NCBI RefSeq assembly: GCF_963853765.1
Contig: NC_088856.1
Span: 42,284,001-42,348,000, forward strand
Reading direction: 5' to 3'
Length of the DNA: 64,000 bases
Source: Magallana gigas
Lineage: Eukaryota
The notes beneath the pieces were generated by a model that made no database searches, was not told the origin of the DNA, and saw only the letters and a program-made list of their open reading frames with translations. Position 1 is the stretch's first letter. The number at the start of each line of letters is the position of its first letter. This document shows positions 1-10,560 of this stretch, one piece after another. The position numbers were made by a program, and so were the translations under genes.

Positions 1-862
1 TGGTGAATGTTTCGAAATACTTCTGAATTAAAGACCTCAATTTAATATAGTACATTGATAGGTTACAAAATTGTTTTAAATGTCTTTTTTCTTCTAAATC
101 TTGCATTACATTAATGTAAACTGCTAATCAGATGAGTTTTCGTAAAACTGAATTTTCAGTGGAAGCTTTGCAAAAAAAAATGGTACCGATGATTGAAATG
201 AAGCAATATTTATCAATGTATTACCTTCAAAATATCAGTTATCAACACAAAACATTCCCTATACAACTTCTTGTTGATCCATTTGTTTGGTTATCTTGCT
301 ATACATTAAAGTATTTTGTAATTCAAATCACCTGTGTAAAACTCAGGTTGAAAAACTAGGATGTTTACATAATATAGAAACATGCAGTGGTGAATGTTTC
401 GAAATACTTCTGAATTAAAGACCTAAATTATATACAGTACATTGATAGGTTACAAAATTGTTTTAAATGTCTTTTTTCTTCTAAATCTTGCATTACATTA
501 ATGTAAACTGCTAATCAGATGAGTTTTCGTAAAACTGAATTTTCAGTGGAAGCTTTGCAAAAAAAATGGTACAGATGATTGAGATGAAGCAATATTTATC
601 AATGTATTACCTTCAAAATATTAGTTATCAACACAAAAATTTCCCTATACAACTTCTTGTTGGTCCATTTGTTTGGTTATCTTGCTATACATTAAAGTAT
701 TTTGTAATTCAAATCACCTGTGTAAAACTCAGGTTGAAAAACTAGGATGTTTACATAATATAGAAACATGCAGTGGTGAATGTTTCGAAATACTTCTGAA
801 TTAAAGACCTCAATTTAATACAGTACACTGATTGGTTACAAAAATTGTTTTAAATGGGTTAT
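1..862. repeat. ~387-bp tandem repeat, ~2.2 copies (truncated by window edge)
   Basis: TGGTGAATGTTTCGAAATACTTCTGAATTAAAGACC recurs at 1, 388 and 774 with near-identical downstream sequence; similarity ends at ~860. Confidence 0.92.
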
Positions 863-1490
863 TTTCTTCTTGCATGACAAATGGGATGCAATGCATGTAT
901 AACAGTAATTTATATTATAAATGGTATTAGTACCCTGTAAATTATTTAATAATATATCAAGCATGAGGGTATTTAGATAAATTAGAACATTTCCCAACAA
1001 CCATCGTATAAAACAATGAAATCCAAAATACATCAACTAAAATAAACAGTTCACAACTACTTATGGGATAAACTGATTATACTGTTACATCATCAGCTAA
1101 TCTTGCATTTTTTTTACTCGAGTGACAATTACAACAATCAAAGACTTACATATCATATTGTGAACATGCAGTTTGTACAAGCATAAAACATTTGGGCATG
1201 TAAAGAGGTCACAAATCACAATCAGTACGAGATGTCCATAAATATGTATCTCTCTCTAGTCAAAGATTAGAATTCCAGTTTACAATAAGATAAGGCAGAG
1301 AGATAGGAGAACCATAACCATGAATACATTGTTATTGTGAATACTAGTCACGTTCACCATTTTTTTTAAATATAAAGAGGTGTTAAAATATTTTTCTTTC
1401 AGAAATCCACTGAAAATTTGAGAAAATTCTAATGTTACGCAAGTCACCGAGTGCGATTTTGTTTACATAAAAATCTACACCGTATGGTCC

Positions 1491-1694
1491 TATAGTGTTT
1501 TTACACCTATATCATATGTGGGTTGCCCCGAACTTTCCGATACATAGCTGATTTGGTCTGTATTGGAATACGGCTTGTTCTCGTTCAGGCAGCAGTCCAA
1601 AGTGATCGGGGTCTTCGCCACGGGCTCCCGCCAGGTGACGTCACAGCCCGTCATCATAGGTAACTCGTCCTTGGAGTAGTCGACAACCACTACA
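1491..1694 (-). repeat. 3' LTR (204 bp)
   Basis: Matches 10347-10550 except one base (AACTTTCCGA vs AACTTACCGA); - strand termini TGTAGTG...CACTATA. Confidence 0.96.
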
Positions 1695-1712
1695 CTCCCC
1701 TCCGTTTTCTTC
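1695..1712 (-). promoter_or_regulatory. Polypurine tract
   Basis: - strand GAAGAAAACGGAGGGGAG abuts the TG of the 3' LTR. Confidence 0.88.
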
Positions 1713-2043
1713 GAAGGGACTCGGCCCAAACTACCAGTGGGCCGGCTCCGTCCACTCCACTAAGCTGGACTTACAACCAACACATCACCAGGGGGCGCGT
1801 AACGCCCATCCCAATCAATACTGGGATCAACATCCCAATCTATACTGGGATCAACAGCCCTCACTTTTACGAGTTCAGAATATGGGCAGATGGGGCCATA
1901 CAAGACATGATGGCCTCCGCCCAATAGAAAACGCCAACTAACCGTCCAGGAAACAGGGTCTGGGGGGGACATAGGAGGGCGCGTACCTACCACTCCTCCA
2001 GGATCAAGATGTGGACCCGGCGGGCTCCAGCATACCTGCGAGG

Positions 2044-2862
2044 TTAGTCTACTGCTATGTACCCTCCTGTCGCAGTCCCAGGTGGCGGGCGGGGGAACTC
2101 CGGAGAGAACTCTACTCCCCTCGCTCTTCCTGCAACCCAGGGGTCCCAGGGCTCCAAGGCGCCCACCAGCTCATCCTCGGACGAGGTCGGGTCTGGGCCA
2201 TAGTCCTCCGGCTCCTCCTCGGGCGGGGTCGCTGCTTCATCTACTTCGGTCTCCTCCCGTCTGAAGCTCTCTCGAGGGGTAGTCGCTTCATCGTCCTCGG
2301 ACTCCTCCTGTCTGAAGCTCTCTGGAGGGGTAGTGGCGTCCTCGTCCTCGGACTCCTCCAGGCAGATGCTCCCCAGGACTGGGGGATCAGGGGCATCCCA
2401 GTCCTCATGGCAAGGAGCCGGGGGCGGGGGTGGCAAGAGCCTAAACATCCCGTACTGCGACAATGGGTGTCCGCTGACTGTCTCGTTGCTCCACAGCTCC
2501 CGGTAGGCCCTCCTTAGGTCCGGGCCCAACCGGGAAACTAGATGTGCCTGTACCCTCCAATGTAACAGGAGAGCGGGATGTAGCCGACCGAACAGGGCAA
2601 ATCGGTGAGGGGGGTCCTCCCCCACAAACCGGCACAGTGCCTCCATGGCCCGATTCAAATCGGTGGGAACACCGGCGGCGGGCTCCTGGAACACTTCGCC
2701 TGTTGGGACGTCCCTCGCCAGGTCCTCTGGAGTGGCTCCTTCCCCCAGCAGGTGGTGAGCCATCCACATAAGAACGCGGTACCGGAGGCTGGCCCCCGCC
2801 TCAGGGGGCACAGACCTCCGGAACACTGGATGTAGGTGGGCCACTGTCACATGAGTTCTCAT
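2044..2862 (-). CDS. Gypsy accessory ORF3, unknown function (272 aa from ATG; frame open back to 2970)
   Basis: Long ORF between pol and the PPT; ATG in ACCATG context overlapping the pol TGA; His/Trp-rich N-half and acidic C-half with 3x17-aa repeats. Confidence 0.6.
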   Translation of the reverse strand: MRTHVTVAHLHPVFRRSVPPEAGASLRYRVLMWMAHHLLGEGATPEDLARDVPTGEVFQEPAAGVPTDLNRAMEALCRFVGEDPPHRFALFGRLHPALLLHWRVQAHLVSRLGPDLRRAYRELWSNETVSGHPLSQYGMFRLLPPPPPAPCHEDWDAPDPPVLGSICLEESEDEDATTPPESFRQEESEDDEATTPRESFRREETEVDEAATPPEEEPEDYGPDPTSSEDELVGALEPWDPWVAGRARGVEFSPEFPRPPPGTATGGYIAVD

Positions 2863-5800
2863 GGTGCGGGTCCGCACCAGGCACCCCAGGAACGGGCAAG
2901 TCGAACTTGGCCCTCTCGAACCTCTCCTCCTCGCGGCCCCCGGTGGTGGGGGGCCTGCGGGGCCTCTTCTTCATCGTAATCATCGTCATCTCTGTAAAAC
3001 AAAAAGACCCTATTAATAGATATTCCCCCCATACACGTCGGACACACAAACTGGTCCATAGTGGTGGCGTCCTCCGGCGAGACTCCCACACACAAGCCGT
3101 GGTACCAGCAGTCGCACTGGTCACACTGGACCATTAGTTTTCCGTCATCAGGACGATGACAGAGGCAATAGAGCTCGGTGTCTGTGGATGTTTCTGGTGA
3201 CTTTTCTGTGGTATCAGAGGATGACTGGCTGGGCCTCGGGGGTCGGTCTCCTCCTCGATAGGGTTCCTCAGGAGTCTTACCCCGCTTCCGAGGACGTCCT
3301 CTGCGGCGAGCGGGTTGAGGCCGACAGTTATCACCCTCAACTGGGCCCTCGATGGCTCTTTTTCCCTGAAAAGTCGAACCTTGCGCCTCGGAATCTTCAT
3401 CAGATCTTACATCACATGGTGAGCCACTCACGAACTTCTCCCGATATCGGGCCAGCCACAAGGGAATATCCCTGTCGTTACACTTTTTAAGGCGGTCGTG
3501 GTTTGCCACCATCACAGCTGTCTTAGTCTTCACACGGTAAAGGTAAGGTGACAGCCTCTTGAGGATGATTCCTGGGCCCTTCCAGGATAGGCTCAACTTC
3601 CGGCACTTGCCCTTAACAGTCGCCGTATCTAGCAGGTATACCAAGTCACCCTCCTCAAAGGGGCGGGTGGCTGCCTTAATGTCAAAATCCCTCTTCATCC
3701 GCTCTTCCGAGGTGTTCAAGCGTCTACGGGCGGTCTCATGCGCCGACTGTATCCTCTCCTCTAGATCTGTCACATAAGTACCAACATTCACCGGATCCTC
3801 TTGAAGGGGAGGCCTGTACATTAAGCTGGCTGGTGTGTTAACTTCCCTGCCCAACATCAGTTTATTGGCGGTGAAACCAGAGTTACGGTTCACTGCAGAG
3901 CGCAGAGCCCCAGCTATCTGTGCAAGATGCTCATCCCAACAATCCTGGGCCTTGTCAATATAGCATCTGACAGCATCCATGAGAGTCCGATTATAACATT
4001 CAACCTGTCCGTTAGCCGACGGGCGATAAGGGGTGGTACGAGCCTTGTGGATCTCCAAGAGTTCACACACCGCCGTGAACAGCTTGCTCTCAAAATTACG
4101 CCCTTGGTCTGTGAAGATCTGGAATGGGCACCCAAACCTAACGAAGAACTCATTTACCGCGGCTGTAGCTGTAACCTCGGCCGTCTGTGAAGGGAGGGGA
4201 ATGCATTCCACCCATTTTGTGAACTGGTCTACCATGACCAAGACATACTCATTTCCCCTCGGAGTCCGTGGAAGTGGTCCTAAGAAGTCCAGGTGCACCC
4301 TCTCCATGGGTGCCCCAGCATGGTACTTAATCATCTCCGCCCTGGCGTGGCGCTGGGGACGTTTGTTTCTACTACAAGGGCCGCAAGTACTGACAAAGTT
4401 CTCAGCCTCTCTCATCATTCTGTACCAAAAGAAGTGCTCCCTCAGCCTGGCTTTAGTTCGTTCGATTCCCTGGTGTCCAGCTGCCGGCACCTCGTGGCAA
4501 AGGCGCAGTACCTCTCGTCTCAGGTCACGGGGCACAATCAAAACTCTTTTCTTCTCTCCCCCCTCCTCTATCTCTTTCCAAAGGACTTTGTCACTATCCA
4601 GATATAACAGATTCCTGTTGATGTAGTAGTGTTTCACAGCCGGGCTGGTCAGAAACAATTCGCCCTCATCTGGTCCCAGTTCTCCCTCCAACCAATCCAA
4701 GATCAAGCCTAACTCTGGGTCATTAGACTGGCTAAGACTCATCTCCCTAGGGGTGAGTCCTACAAGTGACGTCGGGCCTTCGGGGTCCGCCGGAGAGACT
4801 CCCATCACGCAAGCGAACTGAGGGTACCTGCTGATCCGGATATGGGTCCTACAAGGTCCATCCGGGCTACTCTCGCCCTCAGAGTCAATCTCAGGATAGG
4901 GAAAACCGCCAGTCCGTCCCAGAAGTCCTCCAGATACATATCCGAGGGCTATCTCACTGACCGATGGCTGGGCTTCTCCTGATGCACGGCCGTCTACTGT
5001 CCCCTCGAGCTCGTCCTCCGGCAAAGGAGAGTAAATCCAACTTCCTGGCCTAGCAAGCGGGGCTACATCGTCTACCTCATCAGTAAATACATTCCACAAT
5101 TGATGGGCTCTGGTGCACTTACGACATCCACCGCAGGGCAAGTCACTAAGATTCACAGTGAAGTCCACCCCCTGACATCTGGAAGACATGGTTGGTCGAG
5201 AAAGCGCGTCAGCATTCACGTGACGCTTACCGGGCCGATGTTGGATGACCATATTGTACTGGCTGAGCTCCTCCAACCAACGAGCTAGTTGATCCTGGGG
5301 GTACCTAAAGTTCAGCAACCAGATGAGACTATGGTGGTCCGTACGTACAATAAATCTCCGGCCTAGTAGATAATGGCGATACATGCGTGTGAACCGGATG
5401 ACGGCCAGGAGCTCTTTCCGAGTAGTACAGTATTTTTTCTGCTCCGCGGACAAGGTGAGGCTCCCGTAGGCTATGGTTCGCTCCTGCCCCTCTTGAACTT
5501 GGCACAGCTCAGCTCCTATGGCTTCTGCAGACGCATCTGTGTCCAGCACAAACTGATCATTGGCTGTAGGCAGAGCCAGTACCGGGGGTGAAGTGAGGGC
5601 TCTCCGGAGGTTCTCAAAGGCTGTCTGCTGCTCAGGTCCCCAAACAAAGGGTTTCTTGCCAGTGATGTTATACAGCGGATGTGCCATCTGAGCAAAGCCA
5701 GCAATAAACCCTCTATAGTAATTGGCGAAGCCTAGGAACCGCTCCACCTCCTTAACATTAGTGGGAGTCTCCCAATGCTTCACGGCCTCTATGTATTCAT

Positions 5801-7559
5801 CCCCCATCTCTACTCCCGTTCCACTGACCTGCCTTCCCAGAAACTCCACTCGGCGCCGGAACAGCTCACACTTCTTGGGCTTGAACTTCAAGTCATAATC
5901 TCGGAATCGCTGGAACACCTGTCGCAAGTTAGCCAGGTGGTCATCAAAATCACTCCCCAGCACCAGGGCGTCATTCAAGAAGGCCAGAACGATACTCCAG
6001 GTCAGCCCGCGTAACACTAAATTCATTGCCCGGGAGAAGGTAGCAGGGGCATTACAGAGACCAAACCCCATTCTCCGGAACTCAAATAGGCCATACCGGG
6101 TAATGAAGGCAGTTTTCTTTCTGTCCTTGGGGCTGATCATAATTTGATGAAATGCGGAGTTAGCGTCTAGCTTCGAGAACCACACATTTCCCGAGAGGGT
6201 ATCAAGGCACTCATCAATGAGGGGAAGGGGAAAAACATCCTTCCGGGTGACATTGTTCAACCGGCGGTAGTCGAGACACCACCTGACTTGTCCGTCCTTC
6301 TTACGGATGAGGACTGGCGCTGAAGCCCACTCGGACATGGAGGGCTGGATCACTCCAGCGTCAAGCATCTTTTTGAGGTGCGCCTCCTCTTCGCCCGCAA
6401 AGAACACAGGAGTACGCCGCATCCTCTCCTTGACTGGCGGTGCATCTGCAGTGTCAATCTCATGCTCAAGGGCAGTGAAGTTTCCAAAATCAAACTCACT
6501 CCGGGCAAACACATCTTGGAACTCAGACAGCAGGCTAGCAAGTTGGGACCGCTCCTCATCACTCAACTCCGCAGAGGATCGTTCTAGCAGGTCCTGCAAA
6601 TGGGTGGGTACTTCCGGTGGTGTGCCCTCGGGCCCACTCTCAGCCATGCTACGCACCTCCCTCATCAAATAGGGCACCGGCACGTATAGCTCCGCCTCGA
6701 CTGCCTCTCCGATAACACTGCCCTCCTCCAAGGACACATCTTTTCCAGACGCATTAACAAAGCAAGCCAGGGACGCCTCTCCCGCAGCGTGATACGTATG
6801 TGGCATGAGTAAGGCATCCGACAAGTCCTCAATCCTTGGCACAACCAGGTAATCTGACAGTCTTCTCTCTAGCCTAAAAGGGCACATGACTACAGAGCCT
6901 GCAGGAACTCGAACCTTCCTCACCAAAGTCACATTGGCTTCCGTCCGAGCATTCCCCCGTCCATAGGTCATCTGAATTGTCTCACCGCCGAGAATCAGTA
7001 TCCCATGCCTCAGGTCAAGCTGAGCACCGTGGTCTCTCATGATGTCCATCCCCAGTAGCATCTGGTCCTTGAGAGGAGCAACATACAGGTCAACCTTAAG
7101 TGTGCGCTGGCCCACACGAAAATCAAATGGTCCTGCTACAAAACCCTTAAGTCTCGCTCCGTGTCCTGCCTGCAGCAAGGTAACATGCCTTTTAATAGGG
7201 GGCTTTTGTTCTAGCTGGTCATAAAACATCTTCCCTAGGACACTAACCTCTGCCCCGGTGTCCGCCACGGCCTCTATAGATAACCCTTGGATCCTCAATG
7301 GAACCGAGTAACTGGTCTGTGGGCGTACCTGCCCCACCACCACACACAGGTCCTCTACCTCCCCGGCCGTCTCACTGGACTGGGGCATCCAGTCCTCTTC
7401 AATGTCCTCCATGACCTCAACCTCAGTCTCCCTAAACTCGGCAATCTCTACACTGAAATCCGGCACACGCTCAGGACTCGGTTGGAGTTGAGAATCCCCT
7501 CCCCGGAACCACAGGTTCATCATCAGAAAACAGATCGGGTGACTTGGACCGCTCAAATC
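2859..7559 (-). CDS. pol: Pol polyprotein: aspartic protease, RT (FLND variant), RNase H, integrase, AT-hook, PHD finger
   Basis: ADTGA protease; WASAPVLIRKK/CLDYRRLN/KLDANSAFHQI RT motifs; DTDAS...ELLA...TDH...ADALSR RNase H; HHCC plus D(HLDF)-D(TDQG)-E(QVE) integrase; WKGP GPY/F-like motif; frame open from 7559. Confidence 0.95.
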   Translation of the reverse strand, partial: DLSGPSHPICFLMMNLWFRGGDSQLQPSPERVPDFSVEIAEFRETEVEVMEDIEEDWMPQSSETAGEVEDLCVVVGQVRPQTSYSVPLRIQGLSIEAVADTGAEVSVLGKMFYDQLEQKPPIKRHVTLLQAGHGARLKGFVAGPFDFRVGQRTLKVDLYVAPLKDQMLLGMDIMRDHGAQLDLRHGILILGGETIQMTYGRGNARTEANVTLVRKVRVPAGSVVMCPFRLERRLSDYLVVPRIEDLSDALLMPHTYHAAGEASLACFVNASGKDVSLEEGSVIGEAVEAELYVPVPYLMREVRSMAESGPEGTPPEVPTHLQDLLERSSAELSDEERSQLASLLSEFQDVFARSEFDFGNFTALEHEIDTADAPPVKERMRRTPVFFAGEEEAHLKKMLDAGVIQPSMSEWASAPVLIRKKDGQVRWCLDYRRLNNVTRKDVFPLPLIDECLDTLSGNVWFSKLDANSAFHQIMISPKDRKKTAFITRYGLFEFRRMGFGLCNAPATFSRAMNLVLRGLTWSIVLAFLNDALVLGSDFDDHLANLRQVFQRFRDYDLKFKPKKCELFRRRVEFLGRQVSGTGVEMGDEYIEAVKHWETPTNVKEVERFLGFANYYRGFIAGFAQMAHPLYNITGKKPFVWGPEQQTAFENLRRALTSPPVLALPTANDQFVLDTDASAEAIGAELCQVQEGQERTIAYGSLTLSAEQKKYCTTRKELLAVIRFTRMYRHYLLGRRFIVRTDHHSLIWLLNFRYPQDQLARWLEELSQYNMVIQHRPGKRHVNADALSRPTMSSRCQGVDFTVNLSDLPCGGCRKCTRAHQLWNVFTDEVDDVAPLARPGSWIYSPLPEDELEGTVDGRASGEAQPSVSEIALGYVSGGLLGRTGGFPYPEIDSEGESSPDGPCRTHIRISRYPQFACVMGVSPADPEGPTSLVGLTPREMSLSQSNDPELGLILDWLEGELGPDEGELFLTSPAVKHYYINRNLLYLDSDKVLWKEIEEGGEKKRVLIVPRDLRREVLRLCHEVPAAGHQGIERTKARLREHFFWYRMMREAENFVSTCGPCSRNKRPQRHARAEMIKYHAGAPMERVHLDFLGPLPRTPRGNEYVLVMVDQFTKWVECIPLPSQTAEVTATAAVNEFFVRFGCPFQIFTDQGRNFESKLFTAVCELLEIHKARTTPYRPSANGQVECYNRTLMDAVRCYIDKAQDCWDEHLAQIAGALRSAVNRNSGFTANKLMLGREVNTPASLMYRPPLQEDPVNVGTYVTDLEERIQSAHETARRRLNTSEERMKRDFDIKAATRPFEEGDLVYLLDTATVKGKCRKLSLSWKGPGIILKRLSPYLYRVKTKTAVMVANHDRLKKCNDRDIPLWLARYREKFVSGSPCDVRSDEDSEAQGSTFQGKRAIEGPVEGDNCRPQPARRRGRPRKRGKTPEEPYRGGDRPPRPSQSSSDTTEKSPETSTDTELYCLCHRPDDGKLMVQCDQCDCWYHGLCVGVSPEDATTMDQFVCPTCMGGISINRVFLFYRDDDDYDEEEAPQAPHHRGPRGGEVREGQVRLARSWGAWCGPAP
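3033..3170 (-). other. PHD finger (C4HC3) at the Pol/integrase C-terminus
   Basis: YCLCHRPDDGKLMVQCDQCDCWYHGLCVGVSPEDATTMDQFVCPTC. Confidence 0.93.
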
Positions 7560-10038
7560 TCACCTTCAGCCAACTACGTGCCTTCCCGCTCTTCGTGCAA
7601 GAGCGGGCCTCAGCTGCTTGCTGGTCACAACTTGACTTCTCCGTAGGTTGTCCCTGAACTCTATCATCTACGGAGTGCCTTCCTGCCTCCGTACTTCTAT
7701 CCGGGGTCAGCATGCGCACGGCTCCTGAAAGCCGATTCTCACTGGAAGATCTATTCCGGAACCTAGGTCCTCCGCGGTTCCCCTCTGCTGGATTGGCACC
7801 TCGATTGGGTGGGGGGTGTCTCTCTGCCCCACCTACCCCTCCATCTGACCTACGCCTATTATCCAAAGGGCACTCCCGACGGAAGTGTCCTCTTTCACCG
7901 CACCCGTAGCACAAACTTTCCCTGGGACCCCCACTCTTACTCATAGGTGATGGGGTGGCCTCAAGCTTCCCTCCGGCCTCCCTCAGGGCCATCTCCAGTT
8001 GATACACCCGTCCTCTCAAGTCCTGCACCTCTTTACTCTCTGACAAGGCGGGGGTGTCTCTCTTCTCCCTCAGGGCTTCTTCTAGCTTAGATACACGGCT
8101 CGCAATCTCATCATTAGACTTCCTGTCTGCCTCCACTCCCTCTGACCAAGCGGCCTCCTCTGTCAACTCCCTCACTGTCTTATGCCGGTGAGGCTTGCTG
8201 CGGCGCGAGTGTTGGTAATACTGCATTCTGTCCAATGCCTCCTCGACCGTCTTAGGGCTGCCATCCAGCGCATGCAGGCCAGCGTCAACATCTTCCGCAC
8301 CATAGCATAGGCGGGGGATGGCCTGGGTGTGAATGTCTGGCAACTGGGGGAAAGCTCGTGTGGCTAATGTGAGCACACGATCTGCCCATTCTCTCAGGGA
8401 CTCACCGCTGTTCTGCGTTGCAGACTGGAAATTGAGTTGGTGGGTGAGATCCGGAGCCGAGGTACCAAAGCGCTTGTCAAACTTCTTGAGGGTGTCCTTA
8501 AACCGTGGACGGGGACAGACTTCCAGTAGGAGAGTATAATACTCGCTGGCTGCGCCCTCCAGGAAAAAGCAGAACTGGTCATGTTGCTCGGCCTTGGTCC
8601 ATTGCTGGCTGCGCGAGAGCCTCACGAACTTATGAAGGAACGCCTTCCAGCTGGATTTGCCAACATACCGCAGGTCCTTGTACTTCGGCTTGCTACGGGG
8701 CGCAGGTGGCCTATCGCCGTGACTGCGTAATGTGCGGCGCGAGGTAGTGGTAACAGGGTGGGGCAAGGGCTGGGTAGGTAATGCAAAGGGTGGACGATGT
8801 TGCCGGGTCAGCAAACTGGGCGGCCCAGCGGGGGCCTGGGTTCTCCCGTAATCAGGTGAAAGGTCCCTGGGTGGGGGGCCATTGGGTTGCTGTGGGGCAT
8901 GAGCATGTATGCTAGGATTAAGAAAGTGTACCCCGGTCTCCCTGGGAGAGGACTCGTACATTTGTGGGTAAACCTGAGCTACTCTACCTCCCCCCTCCTG
9001 TCTAAAATAATAAGGCTGGGGCGGCACCACAGGTGCAGGGGCAGGGTAACCAAGGCTGCTAGATGGAGGTACGAACAGGCCCCAGGGGGTGCCATCAGGG
9101 CTAACTACAGTTTGATAGCCCGGGAAGGGGTAGGGCGTGGTATGTGCATAGCCTGGGTCGACATGTGACTGGTGTAATTGCCCCGAGGTGGAAGTCCCCC
9201 CACTAGATGTCACTACAATCTGTCCCTGGGTCGTAGAGGTCTGCGTTGTAGAGCCCTGCACTTGCAAATCAGTGAGCTGGGCCGAACTAGGAGCTACATA
9301 ATTGTTCCCCGGAAACGGATTCGTCAGGACTGAGGAGGCCCCCAGGTGACTGGCATGCTGACCCCCCAAGGGCTGGGGTGCGGGGCCTGTGGCCCCAGCA
9401 GGAGAGGGGTGGGGCTGCTGACCAGGGGTGGGTGGGGAATCGAAGACCAAGGCCTGGGGTGCCAGTGCAGGACTGGCTGAAGATACCGGCTGAGGCAAAA
9501 TAACAGGATCCCTGGACTCAAGTGTAGCCTTAGCACTATGGCCTGGCGGGGATTTCCCAGGGGTAGGGGCCACATAAGAACCGCGTGAAATGGGGTCCCC
9601 ATATATAGCACTGGGTGGGACAAAGTCATAATCCCCCACCGGCGAACTGCATCTTATCACAGACCCCTGACTAACACCTGAATGTACTTCACTAGGGACC
9701 TGAAACTGTGCTGGCCTAATATAACTGGCACCCTGGGTACTACCAACCCCCCTCCCCTGACGGTTGGGCAACGCAGTTTCACCCCGAAGGTACCCCGTAC
9801 TACTCACCGGGGGGTGACTTTCTTCCTCGCTGTCTGAAGCAGAGTACATGTGCGCTTTCACCGATGGTCTAGGAGTGTAAAGGTGCTCATCCTCTTCATC
9901 ACTTAGCCTACCATAACTATGCTTGCGAGACGAGCGCCCAATTTGAACAGAAGGTTCCCCCATGGGCGTTATGGTGTCATCGCTATCACTTTCGCTAAGC
10001 CCTAACGCTGCAAAGGCGTTCTCTAAAGAATCGTTCAT
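7471..10038 (-). CDS. gag: Gag (~855 aa from the first ATG): Pro/Ser-rich N-terminus, capsid domain, CCHC knuckle
   Basis: Open frame; capsid-like YVGKSSWKAFLHKF...FLEGAASEYY; knuckle CYGCGERGHFRREC. Confidence 0.9.
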   Translation of the reverse strand: MNDSLENAFAALGLSESDSDDTITPMGEPSVQIGRSSRKHSYGRLSDEEDEHLYTPRPSVKAHMYSASDSEEESHPPVSSTGYLRGETALPNRQGRGVGSTQGASYIRPAQFQVPSEVHSGVSQGSVIRCSSPVGDYDFVPPSAIYGDPISRGSYVAPTPGKSPPGHSAKATLESRDPVILPQPVSSASPALAPQALVFDSPPTPGQQPHPSPAGATGPAPQPLGGQHASHLGASSVLTNPFPGNNYVAPSSAQLTDLQVQGSTTQTSTTQGQIVVTSSGGTSTSGQLHQSHVDPGYAHTTPYPFPGYQTVVSPDGTPWGLFVPPSSSLGYPAPAPVVPPQPYYFRQEGGGRVAQVYPQMYESSPRETGVHFLNPSIHAHAPQQPNGPPPRDLSPDYGRTQAPAGPPSLLTRQHRPPFALPTQPLPHPVTTTSRRTLRSHGDRPPAPRSKPKYKDLRYVGKSSWKAFLHKFVRLSRSQQWTKAEQHDQFCFFLEGAASEYYTLLLEVCPRPRFKDTLKKFDKRFGTSAPDLTHQLNFQSATQNSGESLREWADRVLTLATRAFPQLPDIHTQAIPRLCYGAEDVDAGLHALDGSPKTVEEALDRMQYYQHSRRSKPHRHKTVRELTEEAAWSEGVEADRKSNDEIASRVSKLEEALREKRDTPALSESKEVQDLRGRVYQLEMALREAGGKLEATPSPMSKSGGPRESLCYGCGERGHFRRECPLDNRRRSDGGVGGAERHPPPNRGANPAEGNRGGPRFRNRSSSENRLSGAVRMLTPDRSTEAGRHSVDDRVQGQPTEKSSCDQQAAEARSCTKSGKARSWLKVRFERSKSPDLFSDDEPVVPGRGFSTPTES

Positions 10039-10327
10039 TTTCAAAATGGCGCACACCGGAGCACGTGGCCAAGACAGAAAAAATAGTGCAAAGATAAATG
10101 CAAAATATAAAAGTATGATGCAAAAACAACGTTGCCTAAACAAATAAAAGAATCCTACTCTAAGCTAACAATACTATCATCGAATGCTATAAGTTCAATA
10201 AGTTTAACCACGCGGAGCCCCCAAAAATGGCGGCTACACACGTTTATTTTGAAAAATTTGACTCAAGAAGAAAAAATTCTGACAGACTACGGGAAAAAAA
10301 TTTTCCTTTCGCTAAATCGGAGTTCGG

Positions 10328-10345
10328 GCCTCGAGTTGGGCGCCA
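10328..10345 (-). promoter_or_regulatory. Primer-binding site, tRNA-Lys(CTT)-like
   Basis: - strand TGGCGCCCAACTCGAGGC 1 nt after the LTR; the first 11 nt match the tRNA-Lys1,2 PBS TGGCGCCCAACGTGGGGC. Confidence 0.8.
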
Positions 10346-10346
10346 A

Positions 10347-10550
10347 TATAGTGTTTTTACACCTATATCATATGTGGGTTGCCCCGAACTTACCGATACA
10401 TAGCTGATTTGGTCTGTATTGGAATACGGCTTGTTCTCGTTCAGGCAGCAGTCCAAAGTGATCGGGGTCTTCGCCACGGGCTCCCGCCAGGTGACGTCAC
10501 AGCCCGTCATCATAGGTAACTCGTCCTTGGAGTAGTCGACAACCACTACA
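10347..10550 (-). repeat. 5' LTR (204 bp)
   Basis: Second LTR copy, followed on the - strand by 1 nt and then the PBS. Confidence 0.96.
10492..10499. promoter_or_regulatory. Palindromic CRE/ATF site in the LTR (also 1636-1643)
   Basis: Exact TGACGTCA in both LTRs; function not demonstrated. Confidence 0.4.
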
Positions 10551-10560
10551 GTCCGTAGTT

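What the first reader, a model, noticed from the sequence alone, without database searches (positions are those of the whole stretch)
3033..3314. Gypsy integrase ends in an AT-hook plus a BPTF-like PHD finger instead of a chromodomain
Seen: in frame after the integrase core and WKGP motif, Pol carries PARRRGRPRKRGK (AT-hook core RGRP, ~3279-3314) and a complete C4HC3 PHD finger, LYCLCHRPDDGKLMVQCDQCDCWYHGLCVGVSPEDATTMDQFVCPTC. Established: chromoviruses place a chromodomain at this position to bias integration, and H3K4me3-reading PHDs (BPTF PHD2, DIDO, CFP1) use the Y..M..W cage residues retained here. Inference: this element may tether its intasome to H3K4me3-marked, AT-rich chromatin. That would be a PHD-guided targeting strategy aimed at active promoters rather than heterochromatin.
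Basis: partly seen in the sequence, partly recalled or inferred. Interest (0 to 1): 0.85.

Follow-up and report, generated by a model that had tools for sequence, protein, structure and literature searches.

The report
Oyster Gypsy retrotransposon with PHD-tailed integrase
A young oyster Gypsy-type retrotransposon really does carry a BPTF-like, H3K4me3-reader-type PHD finger (plus an AT-hook motif) behind its integrase. The PHD is inherited by a whole old clade of such elements, but that it steers integration to active promoters is still only an inference, and PHD–retrotransposon fusions have already been catalogued.

Summary
On the minus strand lies a 9,060-bp Ty3/Gypsy element (1491-10550). 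Its two 204-bp LTRs differ at one base, and it has a 4-bp target duplication, a PBS, a PPT, gag and a 1,565-aa pol. After the integrase GPY/F module, pol carries an RGRP AT-hook motif (3276-3314) and a complete C4HC3 PHD finger (3033-3173).

The PHD passes the Pfam threshold. Its best solved relative is BPTF PHD2 (E 5e-16), followed by Spp1, PHF2, CFP1, DIDO1 and PHF8, all of them H3K4me3 readers. A confident model (pLDDT 92) superposes on BPTF bound to H3K4me3 at about 1.2 Å.

It is not a one-off capture. At least six diverged subfamilies in this genome, and 17 of the 150 nearest public integrases, carry the same C-terminal PHD. They form one supported clade. The eight zinc ligands and the cage Trp are invariant, the cage Met is nearly so, and dN/dS is about 0.1-0.2.

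Three corrections apply:
- The lineage is not a chromovirus.
- The AT-hook occurs only in two subfamilies.
- In this subfamily a further conserved coding region follows the PHD.

Targeting of H3K4me3 chromatin was not tested. The idea is already in the literature (Grau-Bové et al.). This scan noted PHD-integrase Gypsy elements twice before on other DNA of this genome.

The parts
1487..1490 (.). Target-site duplication GGAC (3' side of the minus-strand element)
   Evidence: The same 4 bases flank the element at 10551-10554. The two sister copies have their own 4-bp duplications, CATA and AAAT.
1491..1694 (-). 3' LTR, 204 bp, TGTAG...CTATA
   Evidence: Direct repeat of 10347-10550 with one mismatch in 204.
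1695..1712 (-). Polypurine tract next to the 3' LTR
   Evidence: Purine run GAAGAAAACGGAGGGGAG read directly. It is conserved in the sister copies.
2044..2967 (-). ORF3-like conserved coding region in the -1 frame relative to pol (C2H2-like knuckle plus helical region plus acidic repeats). In relatives it is fused in frame to Pol or is a separate third ORF.
   Evidence: Substitutions between copies concentrate at third codon positions of this frame. Homologues follow the PHD in subfamily B (45% identity) and weakly in C, D and E. It is in frame with Pol in L022 and L020. RNA-library contigs carry one extra G at 2947 that joins the two frames. It resembles the N-terminal part of the TatD-bearing third gene of relatives. 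No Pfam family matches.
2859..7556 (-). pol ORF, 1,565 aa: PR 7035-7304, RT 5829-6308, RNase H 5256-5642, H2C2 4359-4535, rve 4020-4313, GPY/F 3483-3584
   Evidence: Translation and Pfam hits. RT motif C reads FLND here and FLDD in sister copies and relatives.
3033..3173 (-). PHD finger (C4HC3), BPTF/Spp1/DIDO type, with cage positions Y, M, W
3276..3314 (-). AT-hook-like basic motif (RGRP core at 3291-3302). It could also act as a nuclear localisation signal.
   Evidence: Read directly. Conserved in subfamily A copies and present twice in subfamily B. No Pfam hit for this short motif.
7471..10143 (-). gag ORF (first Met at 10038) with a CCHC zinc knuckle. It overlaps pol by 86 nt, and pol lies in the +1 frame.
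   Evidence: The frame relation was computed from the coordinates.
10335..10345 (-). Primer-binding site TGGCGCCCAAC, one base after the 5' LTR
   Evidence: Read directly. Identical in the sister copies.
10347..10550 (-). 5' LTR, 204 bp
10551..10554 (.). Target-site duplication GGAC (5' side)

Best explanation
This is a recently inserted member of an old, non-chromoviral Ty3/Gypsy clade. Its integrase carries, as an inherited and selectively maintained feature, a C-terminal PHD finger of the H3K4me3/me2-reader type (BPTF, Spp1/CFP1, DIDO1, PHF2/PHF8). The most likely function is that the PHD docks the integrase-cDNA complex on nucleosomes whose H3 tail is methylated at K4. That would bias integration towards active, promoter-proximal chromatin. 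It would be the euchromatic counterpart of chromodomain tethering in chromoviruses and of LEDGF or BET tethering in retroviruses. In subfamilies A and B an expanded basic linker with one or two RGRP AT-hook motifs probably adds minor-groove DNA affinity or nuclear import. Shown here: the domain identity, the fold, the conservation of ligands and cage residues, clade-wide inheritance, purifying selection, and real integrase-made insertions. Inferred: the histone ligand and any effect on target choice.
For: The PHD passes the Pfam cut-off. The nearest solved relatives by sequence, for this copy and for the clade profile, are all H3K4me3/2 readers. The confident model superposes on H3K4me3-bound BPTF, PHF2, DIDO and Spp1. 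In 13 in-genome copies from six subfamilies the 8 Zn ligands, the cage Met and the cage Trp are invariant, and the first cage position is always Tyr or Phe. With 16 public relatives added, Trp and the ligands stay invariant and Met is kept in at least 90%. dN/dS of the PHD core is 0.09-0.18 where dS is unsaturated, and synonymous sites are saturated between subfamilies. Of the 30 best PHD matches in the genome, 26 have a related Gypsy integrase just upstream on the same strand. In subfamilies C, D and E, and in most public relatives, the stop codon follows the PHD within a few residues, so the PHD is physically the integrase C-terminus. On an integrase tree the PHD carriers form one clade (SH-aLRT 97) with one stray row. 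The three full-length copies have distinct 4-bp target duplications, so integration was real. Long contigs from RNA libraries cover integrase-AT-hook-PHD without a joint. As proof of principle from the literature, an H3K4me3-binding PHD fused to the LEDGF integrase-binding domain redirects HIV-1 integration towards TSSs (Ferris et al. 2010, as reviewed in PMC8149907).
Against: There are no binding data and no integration-site statistics. This subfamily has only three full-length copies. This copy lies 620 bp from a 386-bp tandem repeat and about 5 kb from the nearest gene noted, which is not obviously a promoter. One of BPTF's four cage aromatics (Y17) has no counterpart. Related PHDs can bind other ligands: PHF2 binds a VRK1 peptide, and EBS/SHL bind H3K27me3 (titles). 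RNA-library contigs do not prove transcription. In this subfamily the PHD may sit inside a longer Pol-ORF3 polyprotein whose processing is unknown.
Confidence: 0.5

Rival explanations
1. The PHD is a chromatin or protein tether, but for another ligand. Candidates are unmodified or differently modified H3, or a host protein with an H3-like N-terminus. Any targeting would then not be directed at H3K4me3 promoters.
For: Only three of BPTF's four cage positions are matched. Structural neighbours include PHF2 bound to a VRK1 peptide and EBS/SHL bound to H3K27me3.
Against: The Y/F-M-W constellation is the one shared with Spp1 in the alignment, and it is kept across the clade. All the closest solved relatives are H3K4me2/3 readers.
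Confidence: 0.2
2. The PHD acts at a step other than target choice. It could retain Pol or the pre-integration complex in the nucleus or on mitotic chromatin. It could help the new copy escape silencing. It could also compete with host H3K4me3 readers. The AT-hook-like run would then be mainly a nuclear localisation signal.
For: The basic run is NLS-like and gave no AT_hook HMM hit. The insertions seen are few and not obviously promoter-proximal.
Against: The position directly on the integrase C-terminus, with a stop right after it in most clade members, is where every characterised targeting module of LTR elements sits (chromoviruses; established knowledge).
Confidence: 0.17
3. The PHD belongs functionally to the downstream ORF3 module, which in relatives ends in a TatD nuclease, rather than to the integrase.
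For: In subfamily B, in L020 and in the RNA-library contigs, the PHD frame runs straight into the ORF3-like region. Clade relatives carry a TatD third gene.
Against: In subfamilies C, D and E, and in most public relatives, a stop separates the PHD from ORF3. The three young copies here also have the two in different frames.
Confidence: 0.08
4. Accidental, non-functional capture of a host PHD exon, or an assembly chimera.
For: None found.
Against: The PHD is present in at least six diverged subfamilies and 17 public relatives, is monophyletic on the integrase tree, is under purifying selection, and is in frame. The same stretch occurs in 20 independent sequencing runs from 10 studies.
Confidence: 0.02

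Closest known systems
Chromoviruses (Ty3/Gypsy elements with a chromodomain at the integrase C-terminus, e.g. MAGGY, Tf1)
   Same: An LTR retrotransposon with a small histone-methyl-lysine reader fused behind the GPY/F module of the integrase. The presumed logic is the same: tether the intasome to a chromatin mark.
   Different: The predicted mark is H3K4me3/2 (active chromatin), not H3K9me (heterochromatin). The nearest PHD-less relatives have no chromodomain either, so this is an independent acquisition in a non-chromoviral lineage.
PHD-retrotransposon fusions catalogued by Grau-Bové et al. 2022 (bioRxiv 10.1101/2021.11.30.470311), including PYGO-like PHDs in cnidarian retrotransposons
   Same: PHD readers co-occur with RT and integrase domains, and an H3K4me-reading PHD is explicitly suggested.
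   Different: The PHD here is the BPTF/DIDO/CFP1/PHF2 type, not PYGO-like, and the host is a bivalve. The main text of that paper mentions neither BPTF nor molluscs; its supplement was not read. Here the fusion is shown to define a deep clade with invariant ligands and cage Trp, a near-invariant cage Met, and low dN/dS.
BPTF PHD2 and its subgroup (Spp1/CFP1, DIDO1, PHF2, PHF8, KIAA1718, PPS, TAF3)
   Same: Closest sequence (E 5e-16) and structure (TM 0.81, rmsd about 1.2 Å). The C4HC3 ligands and cage Y, M and W are at the homologous positions.
   Different: Fused to a retroelement integrase rather than a chromatin regulator. It lacks a counterpart of BPTF Y17. Binding has not been measured.
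Other TE-borne PHD fingers: CR1-like non-LTR elements (Kapitonov & Jurka 2003), Chlamydomonas REM1 (Pérez-Alegre 2005), Chlamys Penelope-like elements, Rehavkus
   Same: A PHD as an accessory domain of a transposable element.
   Different: Different element classes and different positions in the protein. None is a metazoan Gypsy integrase tail of this type, as far as the papers read here state.
Engineered LEDGF-IBD/ING2-PHD tether (Ferris et al. 2010, reviewed in PMC8149907)
   Same: An H3K4me3-binding PHD linked to an integrase redirects integration towards TSSs. This is the mechanism proposed here.
   Different: It is artificial, acts in trans through LEDGF, and concerns HIV-1. Here the PHD is natural and covalently part of Pol.
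TatD-nuclease-bearing oyster Gypsy lineage noted earlier in this scan (s1-364085)
   Same: Same genome and the same PHD-integrase clade. Subfamily E here has a 683-aa third ORF ending in TatD, and a public relative has the same layout.
   Different: The window's subfamily keeps only the N-terminal, non-nuclease part of that third gene and adds the AT-hook linker.

Membership tests
PHD finger (Pfam PF00628) | C4HC3 zinc-ligand pattern with canonical spacing | tested here: met
   All eight ligands are present and invariant in 28 aligned clade members.
PHD finger (Pfam PF00628) | Profile score above the curated cut-off | tested here: met
   33.2 and 37.8 bits against a cut-off of 24.
PHD finger (Pfam PF00628) | Cross-braced PHD fold | tested here: met
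   AF2 pLDDT 91.9. Foldseek probability 1.00 to many PHD structures, TM about 0.8.
H3K4me3/me2-reading PHD subgroup (BPTF, Spp1/CFP1, DIDO1, PHF2/8, TAF3) | Cage residues at the K4me3 pocket (BPTF Y10, Y17, Y23, W32; Met replaces Y23 in the Spp1-type fingers) | tested here: met
   Y, M and W sit at the Y10, Y23 and W32 positions, and there is no Y17 counterpart. The Spp1 segment aligned shares the L-M-V and W. W is invariant, M nearly so, and the first position is always Y or F across the clade.
H3K4me3/me2-reading PHD subgroup (BPTF, Spp1/CFP1, DIDO1, PHF2/8, TAF3) | Closest relatives by sequence and structure are members of the subgroup | tested here: met
H3K4me3/me2-reading PHD subgroup (BPTF, Spp1/CFP1, DIDO1, PHF2/8, TAF3) | Selective binding of H3K4me3/me2 peptide | not testable with these tools
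   Needs peptide array, ITC or NMR.
Ty3/Gypsy LTR retrotransposon | LTRs, target-site duplication, PBS and PPT | tested here: met
   204-bp LTRs with 1 mismatch, 4-bp TSD, PBS TGGCGCCCAAC and a purine tract.
Ty3/Gypsy LTR retrotransposon | Domain order PR-RT-RNaseH-IN, and gag with a CCHC knuckle | tested here: met
Chromovirus | Chromodomain at the integrase C-terminus | tested here: not met
   No Chromo hit in Pol or in seven near relatives.
Chromovirus | Placement within the chromovirus clade on an RT/IN phylogeny with reference elements | not tested
AT-hook | G-R-P core flanked by Arg/Lys | tested here: met
   RRRGRPRKRGK read directly. Conserved in subfamily A copies and duplicated in subfamily B.
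AT-hook | Profile match (Pfam AT_hook), or demonstrated minor-groove binding to AT-rich DNA | tested here: inconclusive
   hmmscan at E up to 10 returned nothing for the 38-aa segment. Such short motifs rarely score. DNA binding is not testable here.

The most novel reading that the evidence does not exclude
A deep clade of marine-invertebrate Gypsy retrotransposons uses a natural, covalently attached H3K4me3-reading PHD finger to direct integration to active promoters. It would be the first natural 'euchromatin-tethered' integrase, the mirror image of chromoviruses. The AT-hook linker and the ORF3/TatD module would be later add-ons.
Probability: 0.4. Interest if true: 0.7.

Novelty: new member of a known kind. 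Interest (0 to 1): 0.45.

Why it matters
If the PHD does tether the intasome to H3K4me3, this clade would be a natural experiment in promoter-directed retrotransposition in animals. It would complement chromodomain-directed heterochromatin targeting. It would also offer a compact natural module of about 50 aa whose targeting logic has so far only been shown with engineered tethers. For oyster genomics it flags a Gypsy clade whose insertions may preferentially alter gene regulation.

Tried and rejected
- The search for homologous proteins on Pol residues 1400-1520 found nothing. This is uninformative, since the search depends on shared words and a length window.
- Single-sequence AlphaFold of the 116-aa tail was poor (pLDDT 49). 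It was replaced by the alignment-based model.
- The Pfam scan returned no AT_hook hit.
- Pfam and the ESM-Atlas feature search gave nothing usable for the ORF3-like region (best score 0.84, below the level of evidence).
- The one-off capture and chimera readings were rejected on the copy comparison.
- The reading 'chromovirus with a swapped domain' was rejected, because the PHD-less sister elements lack chromodomains.
- The integration-site preference test was considered and dropped. This subfamily has only three full-length copies, and the session has no gene annotation or chromatin data.
- Flank AT content is 55-68% against a window background of about 60-69% AT outside the element, so it shows nothing.
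- The organisms of the public relatives could not be named. They come from unlabelled ENA, Logan and JGI assemblies.
- Complex prediction was not used. No histone sequence is admissible, and a 15-residue peptide is below its size limit.
Full report
**1. What is at the coordinates**

The finding lies on the minus strand, inside a 1,565-aa ORF (2859-7556).

- Pfam finds, in order: aspartyl protease, RVT_1, RNase H, Integrase_H2C2, rve, a weak Integrase_p58_C (GPY/F) match, and PHD (PF00628). PHD scores 33.2 bits against a cut-off of 24. On the tail alone it scores 37.8 bits.
The basic motif with the RGRP core is at aa 1415-1427 (nt 3276-3314). The PHD finger is at aa 1462-1508 (nt 3033-3173).
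- Upstream lies a gag ORF with a CCHC knuckle (7471-10143). It overlaps pol by 86 nt, and pol is in the +1 frame.

**2. The element**

- Two 204-bp LTRs (1491-1694 and 10347-10550) differ at one base.
- They are flanked by a 4-bp duplication, GGAC.
- A PBS (TGGCGCCCAAC) starts one base inside the 5' LTR. A purine tract abuts the 3' LTR.
- The element is 55-58% G+C in a host background of about 35%.
- The genome holds two more full-length copies of this subfamily, on C1 at 39.06 Mb and 40.32 Mb. Each has its own 4-bp duplication (CATA, AAAT). There are also a few diverged or solo LTRs. So this is a real, recently mobile, low-copy Ty3/Gypsy family.
- The host is an oyster. The assembly has ten large pieces and 564 Mb. 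The stretch occurs in runs labelled 'oyster metagenome'.

**3.

Yes.

- phmmer against all PDB chains puts BPTF PHD2 first (E 5.1e-16). Next come Spp1, PHF2, CFP1, DIDO1, PHF8 and TAF3. All of these were solved with, or are known for, H3K4me3/2.
- In the printed alignment, BPTF Y10, Y23 and W32 align with Y, M and W. Y17 falls in a one-residue gap or Asp.
- A single-sequence model was useless. With a 28-row alignment AlphaFold2 gives pLDDT 91.9.
- Foldseek then ranks H3K4me3-bound BPTF first (TM 0.81, rmsd 1.1-1.5 Å, 46% identity). PPS, KIAA1718, PHF2, DIDO, PHF8 and Spp1 follow.
- A profile of the whole clade hits the same set at E about 1e-20.

**4. One-off capture or family trait?**

It is a family trait.

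- The tail DNA recurs at 95, 93, 89, 85 and 82% identity elsewhere in the genome.
- A protein search with the tail gives 63 matches. Of the 30 best, 26 have a related Gypsy integrase (47-100% identity) immediately upstream on the same strand.
- They fall into at least six subfamilies.
- In 13 copies spanning these subfamilies, the eight zinc ligands, the cage Met, the cage Trp and a Gln are invariant. The first cage position is always Tyr or Phe.
- dN/dS of the PHD core is 0.09-0.18 for pairs with unsaturated dS (0.16-0.74). Between subfamilies the synonymous sites are saturated while the domain is kept.

The same holds outside this genome.

- An exhaustive HMMER search with integrase plus tail finds that 17 of the 150 best cluster representatives carry the same C-terminal PHD. 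Usually the protein ends 1-7 residues after the last Cys.
- Two of them were looked up on their contigs. They show RVT_1...rve+PHD in independently called genes.
- On a maximum-likelihood tree of the integrase region (114 rows), the PHD carriers form one clade: SH-aLRT 97, with 17 PHD rows plus 2 truncated rows. One stray row sits in the unresolved sister group. Two changes of state suffice.
- The sister rows examined have neither PHD nor chromodomain.

**5.

(a) *Not a chromovirus.* The PHD occupies the position of a chromodomain, but in an independent lineage.

(b) *The AT-hook is narrower than the PHD.* The motif exists only in subfamilies A (this one) and B, which has two. In C, D and E the PHD follows the GPY/F module after a short linker. 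The motif fits the consensus by eye and is conserved in an otherwise fast-evolving linker. The Pfam scan returned no AT_hook hit, and the run could equally be a nuclear localisation signal.

(c) *Pol does not simply end in the PHD in this subfamily.*
- The 834-nt ORF at 2044-2877 is open back to about 2967 and lies in the -1 frame relative to pol. It shows a strong third-codon-position excess of substitutions between copies, for example 4/3/32, 9/12/53 and 23/16/71.
- It has homologues behind the PHD in subfamily B (45% identity) and weak ones in C, D and E.
- In subfamily B (L022) and in L020 it is in frame with Pol.
- In contigs of three RNA-library runs from two studies, one extra G in the G-run at 2948-2953 joins the frames.
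- All three young genomic copies have the two frames apart.
- The region resembles the N-terminal part of a third gene that ends in a TatD nuclease in subfamily E and in a public relative. This links the element to the TatD-bearing oyster Gypsy lineage that the scan noted earlier.
- It has no Pfam family, and the Atlas search gave no usable hit for the subfamily B homologue.

(d) *This copy's RT motif C reads FLND.* The sister copies and all relatives checked read F-x-D-D. The sister copies in turn have pol split over several frames. I only describe these states.

**6. Expression**

Contigs of 4.9 and 6.8 kb from metatranscriptomic libraries lie on 2000-6608 and 2000-7400 at about 99% identity, with no joint in the tail. 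The tool itself warns that DNA can be present in such libraries. This is therefore compatible with transcription but does not prove it.

**7. Mechanism**

*Shown:* a bona fide PHD of the H3K4me3/2-reader subgroup, physically at the integrase C-terminus. It is inherited across a deep clade and held under purifying selection, with the ligands and cage Trp invariant and the cage Met nearly so.

*Inferred:* that it binds H3K4me3/2 and biases integration to active chromatin. The inference rests on homology, on the chromovirus precedent (Gao et al. 2008, cited), and on the engineered ING2-PHD/LEDGF tether that moves HIV-1 integration to TSSs.

It could not be tested here:
- This subfamily has only three copies.
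- The session has no annotation or chromatin maps.
- The flank composition is uninformative.
- This copy sits next to a 386-bp tandem repeat, not at an evident promoter.

I put the targeting explanation at about 0.5. The rivals are:
- another ligand (0.2);
- a role other than targeting (0.17);
- a function tied to ORF3 (0.08);
- a non-functional capture (0.02).

**8. Novelty**

- TE-borne PHD fingers have been known since 2003-2005.
- Grau-Bové et al. catalogued 823 gene models that fuse chromatin domains with TE domains, mostly PHD and Chromo. They mention cnidarian retrotransposons with PYGO-like, H3K4me-reading PHDs.
- Their main text mentions neither BPTF nor molluscs. My searches found no paper describing a BPTF/DIDO-type PHD on a Gypsy integrase. 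The library is incomplete, and Repbase and GyDB could not be searched.
- This scan had already noted PHD-integrase Gypsy elements twice on other DNA of this genome.

I therefore file the finding as a new member of a known kind. It is well supported as an observation, moderately interesting, and has a testable hypothesis attached.

Noticed in passing
window 2044-2967 (-): A conserved ORF3-like coding region lies behind the PHD, in the -1 frame relative to pol. It has a C2H2-like CPFxxC...H...H knuckle and acidic repeats. It is fused in frame to Pol in subfamily B and in RNA-library contigs, and it is homologous to the N-terminal part of a TatD-nuclease third gene in relatives. Its function is unknown.
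   Followed up: partly
window 2947-2953: A G-run length difference: 6 G in the assembly, 7 in contigs of three RNA-library runs. It decides whether Pol stops 57 aa after the PHD or runs on about 300 aa. It could be a real polymorphism, a frameshifting site or a homopolymer assembly error.
   Followed up: partly
window 5970-5981 (-): RT motif C reads FLND in this copy. The two sister copies, subfamily B and eight public relatives read F/Y-x-D-D. The sister copies have pol split over several frames.
   Followed up: partly
window 7471-7556 (-): gag and pol overlap by 86 nt with pol in the +1 frame, which is unusual for animal Gypsy elements (Ty1/Ty3-like). RNA-library contigs show several small indels at 7477-7483, right at this junction.
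   Followed up: no
window 1-870: A 386-bp tandem repeat, 2.2 copies at 95% identity and AT-rich. It is cut by the window edge and lies 620 bp from the element's 3' LTR.
   Followed up: no
L060:2715-4763 (-) = G000:C10, downstream of the PHD at 1496627: PHD subfamily E carries a 683-aa third ORF ending in a TatD DNase domain (E 9.5e-35). The public contig L057 (ERZ24900295) has the same rve+PHD followed by a TatD gene.
   Followed up: partly
G000:C1:4854961-4869287 (L007-L010, L019, L024, L043): A cluster of several partial, degraded PHD-tail fragments within about 15 kb on chromosome piece C1. It suggests a nested or tandemly rearranged graveyard of this family.
   Followed up: no
window 2001-10000 vs the rest: The element is 53-58% G+C in a host background of about 31-39%. 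This is a very sharp compositional contrast for a resident retrotransposon.
   Followed up: no
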